From Iphione sp. A-MEVVRFRX5 (Eukaryota), in assembly GCA_976226885.1 (NCBI GenBank), contig OZ320320.1, positions 52,948,001 through 53,012,000 of the forward strand: a stretch of DNA of 64,000 nucleotides. Reading direction: 5' to 3'. Below the pieces are notes generated by a model. The model was not told where the DNA came from. It saw only the letters and a program-made list of their open reading frames with translations, and did not search any database. Positions 1-11,493 of this stretch are shown in pieces. Position 1 is the first letter of the stretch; each line of letters starts with the position of its first letter. The position numbers were made by a program, and so were the translations under genes.

Positions 1-3000
1 TTGTTGAACTTTAATATGAATGATCTCCTGTTGTTGTTTACATTGAAACTGCAGTGTTAGTAGCCAGGAGTGATTGCACAAACTGTCATTGGGTATTCCT
101 AGCCCATGAATACAGCTACCCTTATTTTGATTCCACATCATGGGAGGCAGTCTCACTTTCCAGATAATTAGTGTAAAACATGGATGATCTTCGTTCCCGA
201 TTTAGAGGTACCTCTTCTCTGTATTTTACTCTCAAGCAGTTTTTTGTACACTTCAAACGGCTCTTTCAGCTGTTTCGGGTGAACCTGTCCTTGACAAGGA
301 CCAATGGCCCCACAAATGAACTGTATCAGTCAACTGAGTGCATCTTGATATCTAGTGATATATTTTGTGGAAGGTAGGGGGGCACCGCTGTTGATGAAAA
401 ACAGGGAACGGATCCAAAGTAGAGTTCGGCCTGAAGAACTGTCAAGTTACCTGCAGTTAATTTTCCAAGAATAAACCTTCTCTATGTACTCAATTTTCAC
501 AAAATAAAACTGTGTATCATATCTAACACTCATAGGAAGTATCATATATTCCTCTCAATGATAATATAATAAAATGCGATGATGGAGTGATTTGAAATTT
601 ACTAGGGCTGGCCTATCTGACAGTTGCTCGAGGGAGACGGATGGCAACCATAATGAAATAAATACAATCATGTTCCTCCCCTCCTCATTTGTGCAGGCAT
701 CGGTGAAAACCTGGCATCTGGAACCTGTGAGGTGATATAACAATTCCATTAAGGCGGATGTCTAATGCATGCCTTTACTGTGCTGTATAGGAGGAGAATA
801 GCGGCACGGAGGCAGTCTACACAACCTATTGATTTCCCTTATTATTGTCAAAACATTCAACGAATATAGTCGTGTATACTTGCATACTATAGAGTGTGAT
901 CTCGCTAATATTGACAGACATAGGACTGGCAAAAACGGTAAGAAGTAAGGATGTCCGCAATAGCATTCCATCACTGCCTAAATACCTTCTCTCCTCCCAC
1001 TCACTTCCCCTAACTCTTTTCTCCTCCTGTTCTCGGAACATGAATTTATAGACTTGGTTCTGTCTCTTTTCTGTCCTTCACGTAAGATGTCCCATTTAGA
1101 GGGCTGTCTACAATGAGGGATTCCACACAGCTGTAAGTGTATGGTCACACCAACCTGTAAGCTCATGAATCATTTCCAGAAATAGAAATGAAGAAGGGGA
1201 GGAGTAACAAAACGATAAAAAGAGAGCTACAGACAGGAAAAAAGTAAAGTGAAAGCTGGTGTGACGGTAAAGAGAATGAAGGAAGATATGGAAAGGGAAC
1301 CAGGCGGATAAAAAACAGTAAATGAAAGGGACAGACATAGACAGATCAAGAACTACTAGTATTCAACTTATATGTTATTGGTTGACGGGCTCAGTAGACT
1401 TTAGGTGACCGAAAGGGGAGGGTGAGGGAATCAGAGATAGGAGGGGGGCAGTGGACCTGGGGTTAAGAGGGCACGATGGCGGGGAGGGGGGTTGAGGATG
1501 CAGGAGGAAGGCGACTTGGCTGGTTGGAAACAGGGCAGGAAGACAAGAGAAAAGATTGTGATTGACGACTTGGAAGTGAACACTAGATTGGCTGGAGACT
1601 GAGTGAGGACCCAGTCCTCATCGACCCACTTAGACATTGTGAACACACACGACGGCACCACTCGGGACCATGTTGCCGGAGGACACTGCCTGAGCCAGCG
1701 CATCGATGGTATGGACTTGCTCCCCCAGTCCCCCAAATATTTCAACACTATTCTGTATCTTGAGGGTGAAATCCTCCTTGATTATTCAAATTTACTCTAA
1801 GCGCAATCCATATTTAAGGCCTCTTATCCACCTGTATATAACTGCTACGATCATTTCTTGCAGCCCGTGCATTGATGCATTTTGTAACGGTCGTTGTGAT
1901 TGTCTTAGTAAACGCAATAATATCCGTAATCTGCCCCTTCACTTGAAGTTCATCAGACTCTCAGGAGTGTAAAGTGAATGATCTTACATGCAAGCTGCTG
2001 TCTTTTATTTCCCTTGACGATGCCACTCCCAAATTCATGAACATTAGTAATGAATATGCACTAATGCAATACTCACCAAGACCATAAGTGTGCACAAATG
2101 ATGTATTCTACACCGTGCATAGAGTGATAGTCTATTAGAGTCAACGCTGCTTGACGGAGCCAGCATGTTTCTTGTCAACGGATTTGGTTAACTTTGGGTT
2201 CAGTTAACCTCAATATGAAATAGAGGAAATGTACTGTTGTATCAGACTGAATGGTCGGTATGAGCGGGGAATTCAGTTAACTTGGGCCCGATGAAGTTGG
2301 ACTCACTGTATTTTTATCAAATAAGAATTGACATGATTCATATTTCAGGCATATTGTAAAAGGTGAGCTTCGGAACAATTCCAGTACATCAGATATAAGG
2401 TAAAATTGCGTCTCATCATCTGTAGAGGGCAAAGACAAGCTACATGAGTAGTAGTATGAGAATGTTCCACATCAGTCAAAGAGGTAGGCCTGTGTCATTA
2501 GATGTAAAAGGAGTGTGAACTTCAGTCACAGAGCTTCTCCGACACTTTTGTCACAGAGGGAGGGTTTGCTATATCAGTCCTGGAAGGAGAGTTCCTTTCC
2601 ACACCAGCCATTCTCCTTACCAGCATTATAAAGATGAATAGAATCATGTCCTCAGATGTGGGGAGATCACAGACAGGTAGCTCACTATAGTCACGATATA
2701 GTAGGCAATGTTTGTATGAGGAGCTATAACGACCGTAAGTATCGTACTGCTCAGATTCCACATAATGTACAGATATGTTGTATTAATGTGGGATAATTCA
2801 GTATTAGATATAGAGACAAATATGGTCCATTCTCAGTTAAGTGTAGCATCAGGTGTCTTCAGTATTGAAGCAGGGCTGAGGCAATGCATGCTGCCAAAGT
2901 GTTAGATATAACACCATTTTATGATTCTAGATGTAATTTCTGTTAATTTGATATATAGTTTTACTAGTCTAAAATAGATATTTATGGTCAAAATTCCATG

Positions 3001-3213
3001 TCAAAGATGCTTTGTGCCTTAAAAACCCCCTGTCCATTGTCTGAGTGGTTAAATAGACATTGACAGTTAATAAATAAATATACATTTAAATGAAGCTGTT
3101 GTTTGTTATTCATTCCTTGCTTGCCTTTGGGTAGCAGAATATGACAGACTTGATTCTTCCTGTTGTATGTCTCATGCCTGAGGTGATGGAATTGGCTTGT
3201 CCATGTATTTTGT

Positions 3214-3938
3214 GTAATCTACGCTATTACACATGTAATGTGTACCAGCTATTATTATATTATGACCCTTGTGATTTAAAAAGTACCAAACAGTAGGCGA
3301 GGTTGGAGCATGTCTGAGGCATGAGCAATTCTGAACATATTCAGTGATAAATGTCCTCAGCTGGAGAAGAATGAAATGAGTTAATAGTAGTTTTTTTAAG
3401 GATGTCATCTACGCTATGTGCATTACTCTAAAACCTACAGTATGACAAGTTTTTTTTATGGTTGTCAAGGAAAAGGGCCTATGTGACAATAAAGTAATAA
3501 TGATAGTGCAACATATCTACAAAATGGTCCAGACATATGATCATTAATGGCCAAAATTGTAATATACGCTATGTGTCATCTACGCTATGTAGAATGGAAG
3601 TTTTAGAAAATGTGGCGAAAATCATGGAATTTGACAAAGAAAACGATAGATGGCAGTACTGTACTTCAGAACGGTACCCTGGTGGCAAAACTATGTACTA
3701 TTGGCGCCCTTGCCGCACCAAGTGGACAAGGACAAGAACCTACTTTCGCGCTCGTCGAGTTTGTGTGAGTATAAATATAAATTGATGGTACTTATCTCCG
3801 AATGTAAAGTAGATTACCATATTTGGCATATAGAGTATAAATTAGCAAGATTTTCTCGAAACTTGGAAGAAAAAACTATGTTTGAGATGTTATTAACCGA
3901 TAATGTTAAGGAAGGTCATAAAATATAGCGTAAATGAC
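3214..3938. repeat. Left subterminal array of GTCATCTACGCTA motif (5 copies)
   Basis: Copies at 3214 (GTAATC variant), 3404, 3559 (variant), 3575 and 3926 (minus strand, GTCATTTACGCTA). Confidence 0.9.
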
Positions 3939-4206
3939 TGAAAAAGTGTCGTATATGACACTATATCATATTAGTATAAAAAGAAGCTGTATTAATCGGT
4001 TATCATCGGGGAATTAATTGCAAGTGACTCTGAAGTGCTTTGTGAATATAAAGCAAGTTGTAAGCTGGAAATGTTGTTTGAAATATATTATCAAAAATGT
4101 ATAACTTGTTGCATAGGAAAATGGCAAGAAAATCAGTCTCACAAATCTGCAAAGACTATCGGCAGAGGAAGAAGAGTGCCCCAGATGGAGTAGAATGGAA
4201 GGCTAA
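3594..4206 (+). CDS. Putative small spliced ORF (86 aa; exons 3594-3764 + 4117-4206) overlapping the transposase start in another frame
   Basis: agaATGG start, TGT|gtgagt donor at 3765, ttgttgcatag| acceptor at 4116. The phase-0 join is open (..RARRVC|ENGKKISL..) to TAA at 4204-4206. No recognised homolog. Confidence 0.45.
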
Positions 4207-7200
4207 AGAAGCTGAACGGACCAGCAGGTATGTAAAACATTTTCTGATGTTTCTCTAATTAATACTGTTGGTAGTCTCTAACATTTGTAGTTGTCTCCGA
4301 CCATTCTCTAACAATTCTCTTACAAACTTTGTTAGAGATTCAAACGACTCATCACTAAGTTCACAATTTCTCTCACAAAATAACAGAGGTAGATGCGTGT
4401 ACGTCTGAAAGAAAATTTTAATGATCTCTAATGTTTCTCGCACAGAATTATTACAGTTTCACAAAATTAAAAAAGATACATGTTCAGGCTTCACTTTTCA
4501 CAAAATTAAAAAAGATGTATGTTCAGGCTTCACTGTTCAATGCAAACTAGTCCAAGTTAAGCCCGGCACGTCCCTGGGCACACGCCACTTTTAGTAGGCC
4601 CACGAGGTACTGCTCCTTAGATTTCGATCCTGCCACTTTAAGGTACCGATCCTGGAGCACTTGGATGTCCGCTGAAGTCAGTGGTGATCTGATCGGTGGC
4701 TCCATTGGTCTACGAGTGAAGACCATGCTGGGGACTGTGGGTGGGACTGTGACTGGGACGGTGGCTGATGCTGAAGCACTCACATCGGGCCTTGACACAG
4801 GTTGTTGAGTAATTTCCATTTCCTGAAGATGTGTCTCCAGCTCATTAACCTTCACTTCCAACTCTAAACGAGTACTGTCCTTTAGAGCAGTGTATTGGTC
4901 TTGTCTGGCCTGGCGCTCCCCTGCCACTGCCTCACGTCGGTCCTGCACCTCAGTGGCGAGAGCAGCAGACAGTGATTGCAGCTCCCCAATCTGTTGCCGT
5001 AACACCCCCAACTCATCTCGAAGTGCCTTGATTTCTTCCTGCTGCTTGTCAGATTCTTCCTTCCGTACGCGCACCTCCACTTTGAGGAGGTCCCTGGTGC
5101 TCTTAACATCCTTCAGGGAAGCGTTGATCCGCCGCATCTCATGCTGCATGTGGTACAGAGCCCGCTCTTTGTGGTTGAGGGACTCTTGCTGCGTGCGAAC
5201 CATCTCCTCCAGCTTTTGTACGGTAACTGCGCCCTTGCCTGTCTTCTGTGATGTTTGAGCGGATGCAGACACGGGTGGGGATGGCGCAGGTGAGACTGAT
5301 GCCCTAGTGCGGCGCTTAGTGGACACGGGTGGGGGTGGCGCAGGTGACGCTCCCTTAGCACTGCACTTAGAAGTTGACTTGGGCCTTGGAATCTTACTTC
5401 TTGACCGGGTCTGTGGCCCTTCAGAGTCAGAGGAGTCTGAGAATGAAAAAAAAACATGCACATATCCAATTAATACCTATGTATATATTCTCATTTCTAG
5501 TGTGCATTGTGCAAACTTTGGTTTAAACATCTGATCTTCAACAATTAATTTAACGCCTCATACACTTAGATCTGCATTATAATCTCTCACATCTTTAACG
5601 ATTACAAGTACATTCCATTGAACATTGTCTTATAATACATTGAGAGGAAGGAATGTATTAAGCCTAGTGAAAAAAATGTCGGTGTTTCCGGCAATTGGAC
5701 GACCCTACATTGTAGCTAGTTGTACCTTTTTTCTTGTTTTGTGAATACAATTACAATGTTGTCTTATAATATTACTGACCCCTATCCTGCAGCAGCTCGT
5801 AACGGCTGAGCTCATTGTGGTAACGCTCCATTTTGGCCTGGTACTCCTCCTCGGTGTCCCTGTCTAGCCGGTAGGGGAGCTTGGGACGCAAACCCTTAGC
5901 TGTAATTTAGCCAATGATACCAAATTTAAAACATACCCATTATACAATAACACATTTATTATGAATGACAGATAAGTAAAATCGTTGTCTTACATAAATT
6001 ATGAAGCTCTAGGTGGTTACTCAAAACAAGACTTTACGTACCTTGTCGCTCCTTTCGCCTACTCTCCTCCATTTGGAGCCTTGCTTTTTTCTTTAATTCT
6101 GCTGGGTCCTGCTTGTCTCTCCACGCCTTGCAGCTTTCAGCGTGGCTCAACTTCTTATCTTCAGGAGTCTCAGCCTGTGGGGTTTCCTGCTCTGTGTCGG
6201 TACTCATGGGACTTGGTTGTTTCTCAGCCATAATGTACTCCTTCTGATCAGCGCAAGGTGTAGCCGCAGAGTGAGCAGTGGTGGCAGGGGAAGCACCGTG
6301 GCCCCCAAAGCGTCCCACGTAGGCGCGCATCAGTTAAGGGCCTATTAAGTGTTGCTAGGCGACGCTCGCCTGATGTGCGCTTTTATGTGGGGTGACTATG
6401 ACCACACTGTTCAGAACTGACACGTTGTTAGACGGCGGATCTCCAGGCCTCCCTGTCTGGTCTGATATTCCATCTTATAAATGCGCTTTGTACTTGCAAT
6501 CTCTCACAAATTGAGTATATAGAACCCATCAACAACACACTGAATTTTCATTATTTCTAGCAATCTTTAACAGAATTCTAATAATCTCGCACAGACTCTA
6601 ACAGAATTCTAATAATCTCGCACAGACTCTAACAGAATTCTAATAATCTCGCACAGACTCTAACAGAATTCTCATCTCGCACAGACTCTAACAGAATTCT
6701 CATCTCGCACAGACTCTAACAGAATTCTCATCTCGCACAGACTCTAACGGAATTCTAATAATCTCGCACAGACTCTCATGATCTTGCACACTAACCTCTC
6801 ACCTTGAAGTGAGTGTTGTCATATTGAAGCAGTGTATATAAACATAGGATGAACACTTTGACACAACATGTCTCTCACATTTCTCTAACAGAATAATTGG
6901 ATTCACTATTTAACCACATTTCAGGTACTATGTTCCAATTAGTGAGGTGAAAAACAAGAAGGAACTGTTCCTGCGCCGAGAACGGAACCGACAAGCACAG
7001 GAGAGGAGGCGTGCACGACTGAAGGCCGAGCGGGAACAGCAGCATGAGCAGCTGACCTCTCAGCAGTCCCCTCTGCAATCTTCCCAGCAATCCTCCCAAA
7101 ACTCATCTCAGGCCAGCACATCATCAATTGGGCCGTCATCTTCTGACTCCACTGGCAATGCAATGCCAGTGGCATTCCCCTTCATGACACCTGCAGGGCG

Positions 7201-9268
7201 CCATAGGAGCAGAAAACGCATCAGCAGGGCCGTAGCCAAGAGCAAAAGGAAAGTAGAGAAGTTGGAGCGGGAAAAGAAGACCTCAGCGAGGCTTGTGTGG
7301 AAACTCCAGAAACGCTTACAGAGGGCACAGGCCAAGATCAAGAAGCTGGCGGCAAAGAAGAAGAAGCGGCCAACCCCTAAGGACAAGGCTATGGAGGACC
7401 TCATGAAGGCAGGTTTAGATCCATTTGAGCATGAAGGACTCCTGCGTAAATTAACTGCACATCACTCCGTCCTGGAACAGATCAGGAGTGGCGCTGTAAA
7501 GAGGATATCACGGCAGAAACATTCTCTAGAGCGAATAATAGCTGGGCGACTGACTCGTAAGTACAAGGTGTTGCGATACCTGGGCCATGAGACCTCACTC
7601 AACCGAAACCATCTAGGCACAAGATCTTTCACAAAGAAGAGGCGCCTTCCTACTCTTCGAGAGGACCTCCGTAAATGTGTCGTCACATTCATGGAACGAG
7701 ATGACATTTCACGTGTGATGCCCGGTAAGCGTGACAACACCCGCATTGGTCCCAAACGAGTGCAGACCCGAGTGCTTACAGATTATGTAGCTAATATCTG
7801 GAACAAGTTCCAGTTGGAGTATCCGAACAAGAAGATTTCCCTCTCCGTTTTCTGTCGTCTGCGACCTGCGCACATAAAGGTTTCAGCCTTTTCCAGCCGC
7901 ACATCATGTCTGTGTGTATACCACCAGAACATGGTACTGAAGCTTAAAGCTGGGGGAATATCCACCTCCCCTGACGTACTAGTCAGAGAGCATGAGTCAA
8001 ATGACAACATCTTGGATGCTTGCACAGTGAATGACCCCGTCACCTACTACACCTGGGAGAAAGTGAAAACTGAAGATAGAAGCCAGGTGAAATGTGTCAA
8101 GAAAACGGAGGAAAGAGATACATTCTTAGCTGAACTACGTGAAGACCTGATCAAGTTCAGGGGGCATGTTGCACGTATTTCACTTCAGTTTACAGCACTG
8201 AGGCAGTTGAAAGACACACTTAATTGCAACGAGGCTATTGTTCATATGGACTTTGCCGAGAATTATACTTGTAAAAATGTGGCAGAAGTTCAGTCTGCAT
8301 ACTGGGCTCAGACCCAAGTCACAGTACATCCTGCCCTTTGTTACTACAGGCAGCGGCCTGGGGAGCAGCTTAAGCACAAGAGCTTTGTTTATGTGAGTGC
8401 CATCAACTCACACAACCCGACAACCGTCACTGCCATTCTCCGAGAGATCAATGATGATCTAGATAAGATGTTGCCTGAAATAAAAACTGTCCACTATGTC
8501 ACAGATGGGCCAACATCCCAATATCGCAACAAGGTCATCTTCCATATTGTTGGGAATCACCAGTTCTACTTTCAGAGAGCTGCAACGTGGACCTACCACG
8601 AGGTAGGCCACGGCAAAGGTCCCTGCGACGGCATCGGCGGTACTGTAAAGCGTTTGGCTGATGATGCTGTAAAACAGAACAAGGCAGTCATAGCCAATGC
8701 CAATGACTTCTACACCTGGATGCAGGGCGAACGTTCCATCATCACAAGTAAATTGCTCACACAGAACCAGGTGGATGCAGCAGAGGAGATGGTGGATAAT
8801 ATGGATGCAAAACCAATCAAGGGTACCCTTGCAATTCACGCTGTTGTTGGGCTAAGACATGGGGCAATTGCGACAAGATCCACCAGTTGCTACTGTGACC
8901 AATGTAAATCCCTTGATCTCTGCAATGGTTGGAATGTAGTGAACGTCAAGAAGCAAGATCAGAAACTGTCACTTGAAAAGGGATCCTGGGTTGCAACTGA
9001 TTATTCAGGAATGGCTTACTATGGACGGGTCGAGGATTGCCGTGATGAAGAGGAAACCACTGAATACAAGATTAATTTCCTACTTCCACGCCAGAGTGAT
9101 CCATCAAAGATGTCATGGCCGAAGAAAAAGGACATCATGTGGCTGACAACTGCCGACATGATTTGCAATGTTCCCGCCCCTACAGAAGTTGGATCAACCT
9201 GCACCTTCCCTAGCAAGATCCTGCGCAGAGTTGACCTGCTTCTTGCAACAAGGAACGAAAACCAGTAA
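4121..9268 (+). CDS. DDD/DDE-fold transposase, 816 aa, exons 4121-4227 + 6925-9268
   Basis: Catalytic-type motifs MDFAENY (D at 8249), VTDGPTSQYRN (D at 8504) and GHGKGPCDGIGG (D at 8627), spacing D(84)D(40)D. Also CLCxxH and CYCxxC zinc-binding motifs and a Tudor-like C-terminus. Exon 1 (MARKSVSQICKDYRQR..ERTS) ends AG|gtatgt in phase 2 and joins catttcag|G TAC TAT in phase 2. No internal stops. Confidence 0.9.
4457..4534. repeat. ~39-bp tandem duplication (2 copies)
   Basis: TTTCACAAAATTAAAAAAGAT(A/G)(C/T)ATGTTCAGGCTTCACT occurs twice. Confidence 0.9.
4547..6231 (-). CDS. Nested antisense accessory gene, ~399-aa coiled-coil protein (exons 6231-6042, 5899-5780, 5436-4547)
   Basis: ATG at 6231, donors G|gtacgt and G|gtcagt, acceptors aaattacag| and ttttcattctcag|. 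All junctions are phase 1 and the frame is open. The protein has a basic N-terminus, an S/P-rich linker, a long heptad coiled coil and a helical C-terminus. A further exon at 4404-4255 is possible but could not be joined in frame. Confidence 0.75.
6568..6775. repeat. Minisatellite, 7 units of 31/28 bp, inside the transposase intron
   Basis: TAACAGAATTCT(AATA/C)ATCTCGCACAGACTC arranged as 3x31 + 3x28 + 1x31 bp. Confidence 0.95.
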
Positions 9269-9407
9269 TTGTTAGAGACATGTATACACGGTTCAAGTGC
9301 AAATTTCGTTAGAGACACATTTCTAACTCATTTTATAGTTCACGATTTGCTAGTCTGTGGCAGGGTTTTAATGTTCTACTCATGCACTAGATCATGTTTA
9401 GAGTTGC

Positions 9408-10677
9408 GTCATCTACGCTACAATGTAAAGAATGCATTCAAATAGTTGTCTAATATCACAAACCTACACACAAAATGTGGAAGATTTGTTAGATATGTTC
9501 ATCAGCTTTACTCCCAAACAGCATAAGACGATTCCAAATGGTCACAGAGAATGTTTGAGAATGTTTGAGAGAAACGTGAAAGATGTCATCTACGCTATGA
9601 AGTTATAGAGGCCTGCAGGTTATTCATGTCAGGGATATGATAGGAAATAATGACAAATATGTTAGAAAATTCATCCATATTATTTACAGTCTAAAAAACA
9701 TACTGATAAAGTATTTTGTGGGAGACTTGTGAGAGATTTGTTAGAGCTGTCATCTACGCTATCCAATTACTGACTTCATTTATTGCATTCCATCTTAATC
9801 CTTCTTCCCAAGTTATTCCTGTTGAATCATGTCAATTAAACTGCATACTTGGGTTCTCATACACATTTGTTGCAATACCATATCGATTCATTGCATTTAC
9901 ACACAAAGAGGGAGTGACCATAGATTATGTCATCTACGCTATCAAGTTTCAGATTCAATGTTTTCGTAACTTGTACATCACTGGTATGCAGCATTTAGAA
10001 AGAATTAATTTAAATGAGTAGCACACATTTCAATTGCACTTTTTGCGTGCACATTCTCTCTATTATTAACATATTTGACATGATCATGGATCTTTCCAAT
10101 ACATGAAATTGCTGTTAAAGATACACTATAAAATGTCATCGTTGAGACACATGCAACCATAGGATGAAAATGGTCTCTTTTTTCAATATTACTGCTCTGT
10201 GCATGATATACTGCTGTTCATTCACTCCAGATTTCAGTCAATATCCACAAATAGACATTTTGTGTGTTATTTACATCTGTGTCATCTACGCTATTCTTAA
10301 CATAACAGATCTGGATCAACTTCTCTGCTGTAATGGTATATAACATGGAATAAATAAGGGATTTACTGCTTTGTAAAAGATTGCCTGTCTGACTCATTCT
10401 AAAATAACACATAATTTGAATTACATTGGCTCCATTAATAACTGTGAAAGTCTGTCTTACTTTCAGACACATTGCTTTTACTTGTAATAGAAAATTTAGT
10501 GGTAATTTCTATGCTGGTTACCACAGATTCATAAAGTCATATAAACAATTTGGGATACATACCTCAAATCAACACATACAATATCATATATTAGTTATTA
10601 AAAATTTTACAATATTTACCTTATAATTAAGTATACCATCGTCTAATGACTTTAAGAGTGATAATAGCGTAGATTAC
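9408..10677. repeat. Right subterminal array of GTCATCTACGCTA motif (6 copies)
   Basis: Exact copies at 9408, 9585, 9749, 9929 and 10281; inverted GTAATC variant at 10665. Confidence 0.9.
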
Positions 10678-11493
10678 ATATCTACTTTTATTGAATTGCT
10701 TTACTTAAGTTTAAACATCCATTCCACAAAATGTATGATACCTTGAATCACAAAAATTTCCAACATTATGCTTCAATGCCTTCTCCATCAAGGAACAACA
10801 GTGAGCTGTCTTTTTGCACAAATTTTTTTTTTTCAAATAGTCTCCTACAGATGCTACACTTAACTGGGAATGGACCAATTACTCCTACCCAATAATGAGT
10901 TAAACCTGCTGAAGGTAATAGACTGATCACGTACATCACGTCGCATGGTCAGTGATCTCTTGGCAGACTCTGATACATTTTGCGTAATACCATATATTTT
11001 TTGTGCTGTTTTCAAATTGTACATGTTCAAGTAATGTACATTGCATGTTCACAAAAATCATCAAGCAAATAAAGTTATTATCTTCACATACATGATTTGT
11101 TTTTGAAAACAGTAGTGCACCACACAAAAATGAGTTATGTACTCCAATACTTGGTGATTTTCATGATTACAGATGCAAATAAAAAATGACAGTGACAAAC
11201 CAACATAAATGTGATGTGGTTGTGTTTTTTTTATTTGTTTTTTAATGTAACTGGGATGCAGAAATATTGTAATGGAATGTGTGAGGCACTCTCTATCTCC
11301 TGAGATTGAGTCACACTACAGACTTTCCAGCATGACTGACTTTAAAATTTCTGATTTACTCGCACCTTTGGGAATATCATCTCTACCTTATGCCTGTACT
11401 TTCCGGCAAGTTGTGCACAGGGATACCTTCATCGCAGAAGGTTATCTTGTCAATTTTAAGTTGACAAAAGTTGGGGAAGAAATCAAGATCACA

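What the first reader, a model, noticed from the sequence alone, without database searches (positions are those of the whole stretch)
4121..9268. Transposase gene whose 2.7-kb intron hosts a complete antisense multi-exon gene
Seen: the 773-aa track ORF lacks an ATG. Its missing N-terminal exon is at 4121-4227 and joins in the correct phase at 6925. The intron (4228-6924) contains a three-exon ~399-aa coiled-coil gene on the opposite strand with clean phase-1 junctions. Inference: a nested two- or three-gene architecture in a cut-and-paste element, in which transcription of one gene interferes with or produces dsRNA against the other, giving a self-regulating switch. I do not recall this layout described for Sola-like elements, but cannot check.
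Basis: partly seen in the sequence, partly recalled or inferred. Interest (0 to 1): 0.7.

Follow-up and report, generated by a model that had tools for sequence, protein, structure and literature searches.

The report
Two-gene Sola-type transposon, nested genes
This is a young, multi-copy cut-and-paste jumping gene whose transposase gene is split by a 2.7-kb intron holding a complete opposite-strand gene for an orphan coiled-coil protein; the layout is real and conserved, but what the extra gene does is unproven.

Summary
Window 2824-10876 is an 8,053-bp DNA transposon with 27-bp terminal inverted repeats and 4-bp target-site duplications. At least 16 copies in this genome are 93-100% identical and carry both genes.

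The transposase has two exons, 4121-4227 and 6925-9268, giving 816 aa. Exon 1 is the only ORF piece in the 64-kb window that matches the conserved N-terminus of homologues from other animals (E 4.5e-6).

The intron carries a three-exon, 399-aa antisense gene. Its splice sites are intact in all 9 copies examined and its dN/dS is 0.14-0.27.

Sister families in the same genome (about 53% transposase identity) keep the same nested order. Another family (48%) has the same gene upstream and divergent from an intronless transposase. Others have a short intron and no second gene.

The transposase has an RNase H-like core with an invariant DDD triad and shares ordered motifs with published Sola2 transposases. 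The second gene has no relative outside this genome.

No RNA data could be obtained, so the proposed antisense "switch" is untested. The non-nested layout also weakens it.

This scan has already reported the same architecture on other DNA of this genome (s1-317835, s1-347241).

The parts
2820..2823 (.). left flanking 4 bp (ATAT), the target-site-duplication position
   Evidence: It does not match the right flank in this copy, but matches the right flank of the copy at C1:107.16M.
2824..2850 (+). 5' terminal inverted repeat, 27 bp, starting GGTCCATTC
   Evidence: Homology among 8 copies starts exactly here. 26 of 27 bases are complementary to the 3' end.
3215..3937 (.). 5' subterminal region with 4 copies of the 12-mer TCATCTACGCTA; presumed promoter region of the transposase gene (TATAAA at 3975 and 4047)
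   Evidence: 10 matches in the window, all inside the element, 0.15 expected by chance. TATA positions.
4121..4227 (+). transposase exon 1 (35 codons plus 2 nt), conserved basic N-terminal motif
4228..6924 (+). transposase intron, 2,697 nt, GTATGT...TTTCAG
   Evidence: GT and AG kept in 9 of 9 copies
4243..4450 (+). cluster of TTTCTCT(A/C)ACA-type motifs at the 5' end of the intron
4457..4539 (.). 39-bp tandem repeat (2.1 copies) just past the gene-2 stop; the only minus-strand poly(A) signal (ATTAAA) lies nearby at 4422-4417
4547..5436 (-). gene 2 exon 3 (stop 4549-4547): disordered S/P-rich stretch, about 138-residue single helix, small C-terminal helix pair
5780..5899 (-). gene 2 exon 2, its most conserved part
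   Evidence: 72% identity in nested sister families, 61% in the divergent-layout family
6042..6231 (-). gene 2 exon 1, coding part from ATG 6231-6229
6232..6924 (.). region between the gene-2 start and transposase exon 2; holds a 28/31-bp tandem array (6539-6777) whose copy number differs among copies
6925..9268 (+). transposase exon 2 (stop 9266-9268): coiled helix, CxC..H motif, RNase H-like core, C-terminal chromo-like barrel. Catalytic codons are D435 at 8249-8251, D520 at 8504-8506 and D561 at 8627-8629 (ORF numbering; add 43 for the 816-aa protein)
9269..10849 (.). 3' subterminal region: 6 copies of the TCATCTACGCTA 12-mer and 9 minus-strand TCTCTAACA-type motifs
10850..10876 (-). 3' terminal inverted repeat, 27 bp
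10877..10880 (.). right flanking 4 bp (AATT)

Best explanation
Window 2824-10876 is one copy of a recently active, autonomous Sola-type (most likely Sola2) cut-and-paste DNA transposon that carries two genes.

The transposase gene runs left to right. A promoter in the 5' subterminal region (inferred) drives a pre-mRNA. Exon 1 encodes a conserved basic N-terminal motif, a 2,697-nt intron is removed, and exon 2 encodes the rest of an 816-aa DDD transposase with a C-terminal chromo-like barrel.

Inside that intron, on the other strand, lies a complete three-exon gene for a 399-aa protein. The protein is built around one long coiled-coil helix. It is found only in this genome and always next to transposases of this kind.

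Shown here: the element's ends and target-site duplications, the gene models, their conservation among copies and among diverged sister families, purifying selection on both genes, and the transposase fold.

Inferred: the second protein is an element-encoded accessory or regulatory factor that helps the element but is not strictly needed in cis. The nesting is one of two tolerated placements of that gene, not the working principle.
For: Ends. Homology among copies starts at 2824 and stops at 10876. The 27-bp TIRs match at 26 of 27 positions. Identical 4-bp TSDs flank 7 of 9 copies that have both flanks.

Copies. Ten copies have an uninterrupted 773-codon frame at 98-100% identity. All copies compared are collinear across the nested gene.

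Exon 1. It is supported by the profile hit at E 4.5e-6, the only one in the window, and by direct comparison with homologues that read M..SRAEIQK.YRERKK...KYYVP.

Gene 2. Splice sites are kept in 9 of 9 copies. There are no indels in its exons while introns carry indels. dN/dS is 0.14-0.27, against 0.19-0.37 for the transposase in three of four comparisons and 0.78 in the fourth, which rests on 11 differences.

Other families, by coordinates. Sixteen loci of two sister families (about 53% transposase and 51% gene-2 identity) keep the order exon 1, antisense three-exon gene 2, main ORF. At least 16 loci of a 48% family have gene 2 upstream and divergent from a single 859-codon transposase frame.

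Transposase. The AF2 model has pLDDT 81. Residues 415-613 align to Mos1 transposase (Z 10.6) and to retroviral integrase cores (Z about 10, rmsd 2.5-3.0). D435, D520 and D561 are invariant in 27 sequences. In the model they sit at the end of the first core strand, at the end of the strand 514-520, and at the start of the helix 559-576.

Sola link. The motifs CxC..H, MDFxEN, SDxxxH, W[ST]D and HGK[SG]xxD occur in the same order in Sola2_DFa-2 and Sola2_PPa-1 (PMC3627910, Additional file 3). Sola is defined by a DDD transposase and 4-bp TSDs (PMC10741241).
Against: No RNA evidence exists for any junction or for expression of either gene; none was listed.

The Sola2 assignment rests on motif order read by eye, a DDD triad and a 4-bp TSD. 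No alignment with an E-value to a reference Sola2 transposase could be run. The TSDs here are not strictly AT-rich as reported for amoebozoan Sola2.

Families with a 300-460-bp intron and no gene 2, including the closest relative that shares the TIR, also have intact multi-copy transposase frames. Gene 2 is therefore not required in cis.

The function of gene 2 is inference only: no Pfam family, no homologue, no recognisable DNA-binding domain.
Confidence: 0.8

Rival explanations
1. Gene 2 is a passenger: a captured or de novo coding sequence that is carried along and does nothing for the element.
For: It has no relative in about 15 billion proteins apart from one compositional bacterial hit. 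Related families without it have many intact copies. Its exon 3 differs among copies about twice as much as the rest of the element.
Against: dN/dS is 0.14-0.27. Its exons carry no indels or stops in nearly all copies. The three-exon structure is kept in nested families at about 50% protein divergence, and the gene is kept in two different layouts. A neutral passenger would have decayed.
Confidence: 0.22
2. One reading: because the genes are nested and antisense, transcription of one blocks the other or yields dsRNA, giving built-in self-regulation.
For: The transposase pre-mRNA must be complementary to the whole gene-2 mRNA. This follows from the geometry of the gene models. The nested order is kept in three families.
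Against: No RNA or small-RNA data are available. A sister family keeps gene 2 outside the transposase gene, head to head. Mature mRNAs need not overlap, since ATTAAA at 4422 lies 195 bp from exon 1. Several families lack gene 2 altogether.
Confidence: 0.12
3. Exon 1 is mis-assigned and the two genes are simply divergent from a shared promoter at 6232-6924.
For: This is the layout of the 48% sister family. TATAAA boxes lie on the plus strand at 6476 and 6837.
Against: The main frame has no ATG before residue 73, while homologues align from residue 2-5. The conserved N-terminal motif is encoded only at 4121-4227. It sits at the same relative place in 16 loci of two sister families.
Confidence: 0.04

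Closest known systems
Sola2 DNA transposons (Bao et al. 2009; Sola2-Fanzor elements DFa-2 and PPa-1 of Bao and Jurka 2013, PMC3627910)
   Same: TIRs, 4-bp TSDs, size within the 2-9 kb range, and a DDD transposase with the same ordered motifs (MDFxEN, W[ST]D, HGK[SG]xxD). Like the amoebozoan Sola2-Fanzor chimeras, this element carries a second, unrelated protein gene.
   Different: The second gene is an orphan coiled-coil protein, not Fanzor/TnpB. It lies antisense inside the transposase's first intron. TSDs are not restricted to AT-only tetramers. Membership was judged from motifs, not from a scored alignment.
Two-gene cut-and-paste elements with an accessory protein (PIF/Harbinger Myb-like protein, MuDR mudrB, En/Spm TnpA); compared from general knowledge
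   Same: A transposase plus a second element-encoded protein, and arrays of short subterminal motifs that could be binding sites.
   Different: In those elements the second gene lies beside the transposase gene or is made by alternative splicing. It is not nested antisense in an intron. No DNA-binding domain is recognisable in gene 2 here.
Sister families in the same genome, reported earlier by this scan (s1-317835 with a 3.3-kb intron; s1-347241, an 8.15-kb element)
   Same: The same transposase kind, the same orphan partner gene and the same nested order.
   Different: They are different families or copies. This report adds exact ends and TSDs for this family, the head-to-head layout, the gene-less short-intron relatives, and the motif arrays.

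Membership tests
Sola superfamily | Transposase with a DDD catalytic triad in an RNase H-like fold | tested here: met
   D435, D520 and D561 are invariant in 27 sequences. In the model they lie at the end of strand 429-434, the end of strand 514-520 and the start of helix 559-576. The core aligns to Mos1 (Z 10.6) and to integrases (Z about 10).
Sola superfamily | 4-bp target-site duplications (PMC10741241, PMC3627910) | tested here: met
   7 of 9 copies with both flanks have identical 4-mers. The other two carry each other's 4-mers.
Sola superfamily | Terminal inverted repeats (reported range 11-1124 bp) | tested here: met
   27 bp, 26 of 27 complementary.
Sola2 group | Sequence similarity to reference Sola2 transposases | tested here: inconclusive
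   The ordered motifs match Sola2_DFa-2 and Sola2_PPa-1 as printed in PMC3627910 Additional file 3, but only by eye. The sequences could not be handed to an aligner. A profile word search reached no amoebozoan protein. Repbase and Dfam are not available.
Sola2 group | AT-rich 4-bp TSDs (AWWT, ATAT, AAAT) as reported for amoebozoan Sola2 | tested here: inconclusive
   TSDs here are ATGT, ATAT, CCTA, TAGC, GTTA, TATT and ATAC. Some fit and some do not.
Sola1 and Sola3 groups | Group-specific transposase and termini | not testable with these tools
   No reference protein is held. Two bivalve Sola1 consensus starts (GACGTTCC..., GACTGCCG...) differ from GGTCCATTC.

The most novel reading that the evidence does not exclude
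The orphan coiled-coil protein is a true transposition cofactor or self-limiter of these Sola2 elements. Its antisense placement inside the transposase intron would then couple the two genes' expression inversely, through collision of polymerases or nuclear dsRNA. That would be an autoregulatory circuit carried by a DNA transposon.
Probability: 0.12. Interest if true: 0.7.

Novelty: new variant of a known kind. Interest (0 to 1): 0.45.

Why it matters
Sola transposons are among the least studied cut-and-paste superfamilies, and none has been shown to jump in an assay as far as I know.

This family offers near-identical, apparently intact copies with defined ends. It also offers a natural comparison across relatives in one genome: the partner gene nested, head to head, or absent. 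That makes two questions directly testable: what the partner protein does, and whether gene nesting matters for transposon control.

The full-text searches found no paper describing a gene nested in a transposase intron. That is weak evidence that the layout is undescribed.

Tried and rejected
1. I suspected gene 2 and the transposase share an N-terminal basic motif (SHAESCKAWRDK versus SRAEIQKAYRERK). BLASTP gave E 6.9 and the N-terminus profile did not hit gene 2 exon 1. Rejected.

2. I looked for TIRs or TSDs of gene 2's own inside the intron. Only short direct motif repeats occur at both intron ends, and no flanking inverted repeats.

3. RNA support: no run was listed, so read laying could not be used.

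Their layouts were therefore read from match coordinates only, and no family tree could be built.

6. Bao et al. 2009 and Yuan and Wessler 2011 are not held. The Sola2 alignment supplement is an unreadable image.

7. The single hit of the big protein search (P0050, E 7.7e-7) is a bacterial signal-peptide, P/A-rich, TPR protein. I treat it as a compositional match.

8. The sigma-70 promoter scan does not apply to an animal genome and was ignored.

9. The spliced proteins were never joined for a search. Each exon was searched by reference.
Full report
**What is in the sequence.** The 773-codon open frame at 6947-9268 is real. It has no in-frame ATG before residue 73. It stays open upstream to an AG at 6923-6924. 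At 4121 an ATG opens a 107-nt exon that ends before GTATGT. Joining 4227 to 6925 keeps the frame and reads ...RTSR|YYVPISEV.

On the other strand lie three open pieces: 6231-6042, 5899-5780 and 5436-4550. They are bounded by GT..AG, both junctions are phase 1, and together they give 399 aa.

**Is exon 1 real?** Full-length homologues from other animals (oyster, mussel, sea urchin, amphioxus, acorn worm) begin M..SRAEIQK.YRERKK......KYYVP. I built a profile from 20 such N-termini and ran it against all 1,284 six-frame ORF pieces of the 64-kb window. Only the piece 4082-4255 matched (E 4.5e-6; the next best was 0.62).

**The element.** I compared the window with 12 other copies from the same genome. 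Homology begins at 2824 and ends at 10876, giving 8,053 bp.
- The ends are 27-bp inverted repeats starting GGTCCATTC, matching at 26 of 27 positions.
- Seven of the nine copies for which I had both flanks have identical 4-bp duplications.
- Ten copies carry an uninterrupted 773-codon frame at 98-100% identity.
- About 16-18 copies carry both ends.
- Every copy compared is collinear across the intron, so the antisense gene is not a later insertion into this copy.
- Nothing inside the intron looks like ends of its own. There are only short direct repeats of a TTTCTCTAACA-type motif at both intron ends.

**Selection.** Both ATGs, the gene-2 stop and all six splice dinucleotides are kept in 9 of 9 copies. 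Gene-2 exons carry no indels, while introns and spacers do. Against the four most diverged copies, dN/dS is 0.14-0.27 for gene-2 exon 3. For the transposase it is 0.19-0.37 in three comparisons and 0.78 in the fourth, which rests on only 11 differences.

**Other families in the same genome.** I could no longer fetch letters from the genome. The exon-by-exon searches still gave coordinates.
- Sixteen loci of two families (about 53% transposase identity; gene 2 at 51% in exon 3 and 72% in exon 2) show the same order. A transposase exon-1 homologue comes first, then the three gene-2 exons on the other strand, then the main frame. An example is C2:99,324,991 down to 99,319,182, with an intron of about 3.3 kb.
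- At least 16 loci of a 48% family show a single 859-codon transposase frame that includes exon 1. Gene 2 lies upstream and divergent about 770 bp away, with its exons 2 and 3 fused (for example C11:77,217,676-77,222,335).
- Several further families (50-57%) have exon 1, an intron of about 300-460 bp and no gene-2 match. For gene-2 exon 1 all candidates were scored. One of these families, at C15:18.14M, shares the terminal 38 bp with this element.

So gene 2 travels with this kind of transposase. It is not always inside the intron, and it is not indispensable in cis.

**The transposase.** Pfam finds nothing. An AlphaFold model built on a 27-sequence alignment has mean pLDDT 81. Residues 415-613 align to the catalytic cores of Mos1 mariner transposase (Z 10.6, 177 residues) and of retroviral integrases (Z about 10, rmsd 2.5-3.0).

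D435, D520 and D561 are invariant. They sit at the end of the first core strand, at the end of the strand 514-520, and at the start of the helix 559-576. That is the usual DDE/D geometry, which I state from general knowledge. The C-terminus resembles the MRG15 chromo barrel.

Sola elements are defined by DDD transposases and 4-bp TSDs (PMC10741241; PMC3627910). Two published Sola2 transposases printed in PMC3627910 Additional file 3 show the same motifs in the same order: CxxC-H, MDFKEN, SDVLNH, WSD/WCD and HGKSxxD. I could compare them only by eye. Two earlier notes of this scan also call the family Sola2. That is not independent evidence.

**Gene 2.** There is no Pfam family beyond weak coiled-coil matches. 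The word search found no hit and no Atlas cluster scored above 0.87. In the full phmmer search of 1.84 billion representatives there was one hit, a bacterial P/A-rich TPR protein that I regard as compositional.

A single-sequence model of exon 3 gives a disordered S/P-rich start, one uninterrupted helix of about 138 residues (pLDDT above 96) and a small C-terminal helix pair.

**Possible binding sites.** The 12-mer TCATCTACGCTA occurs 10 times in the window. All copies lie inside the element's two subterminal regions, against 0.15 expected by chance. TCTCTAACA-type motifs occur 26 times in the element, against about 2.4 expected for its length. They are almost all on the plus strand at 4275-6890 and on the minus strand at 9270-10113.

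**How it most likely works.**
- Shown: an apparently intact two-gene Sola-type transposon whose transposase gene contains the partner gene in its intron.
- Inferred: the partner protein is an accessory or regulatory factor that is kept by selection but is dispensable in cis. The nesting is one of two tolerated placements.

It has no evidence, and the head-to-head family weakens it. If the only poly(A) signal after the gene-2 stop (ATTAAA at 4422) is used, the mature mRNAs do not overlap.

**Limits.**
- No RNA run was listed.
- The joined (spliced) proteins were not searched. Each exon was searched by reference.
- No family tree could be built.
- The same architecture was already reported by this scan on other DNA of this genome.

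Noticed in passing
window 2820-2823 and 10877-10880; copy at G000:C1:107163754-107171806 (L013, L030): This copy is flanked by ATAT on the left and AATT on the right. The 99.9%-identical copy on contig C1 is flanked by AATT and ATAT. The two copies have therefore swapped flanks. This is either a reciprocal exchange between two chromosomes at the element or an assembly mis-join through the 8-kb repeat.
   Followed up: partly
window 6925-9268, residues about 680-755 of the ORF: The transposase ends in a small beta barrel that Foldseek matches to the MRG15 chromo domain (probability 1.00, TM 0.58 on the target). It is conserved across the whole family and could steer insertion towards marked chromatin.
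   Followed up: no
window 4547-5436 compared with the rest of the element: Among copies, gene-2 exon 3 differs about twice as much as the transposase exon or the non-coding parts (5.1% against 2.3-3.5% to copy L023; dS 0.115 against 0.048). It still has low dN/dS. Possible causes are CpG decay in this GC-rich exon or exchange with other subfamilies.
   Followed up: no
window 6539-6777: The 28/31-bp tandem array between the gene-2 start and transposase exon 2 varies in copy number among otherwise near-identical copies.
   Followed up: no
G000:C26:29293738-29311410 (L023, L041): One older copy (about 94% identity, 3 stops in the transposase) has its 3' end about 9.5 kb further away than expected, so something has been inserted into it.
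   Followed up: no
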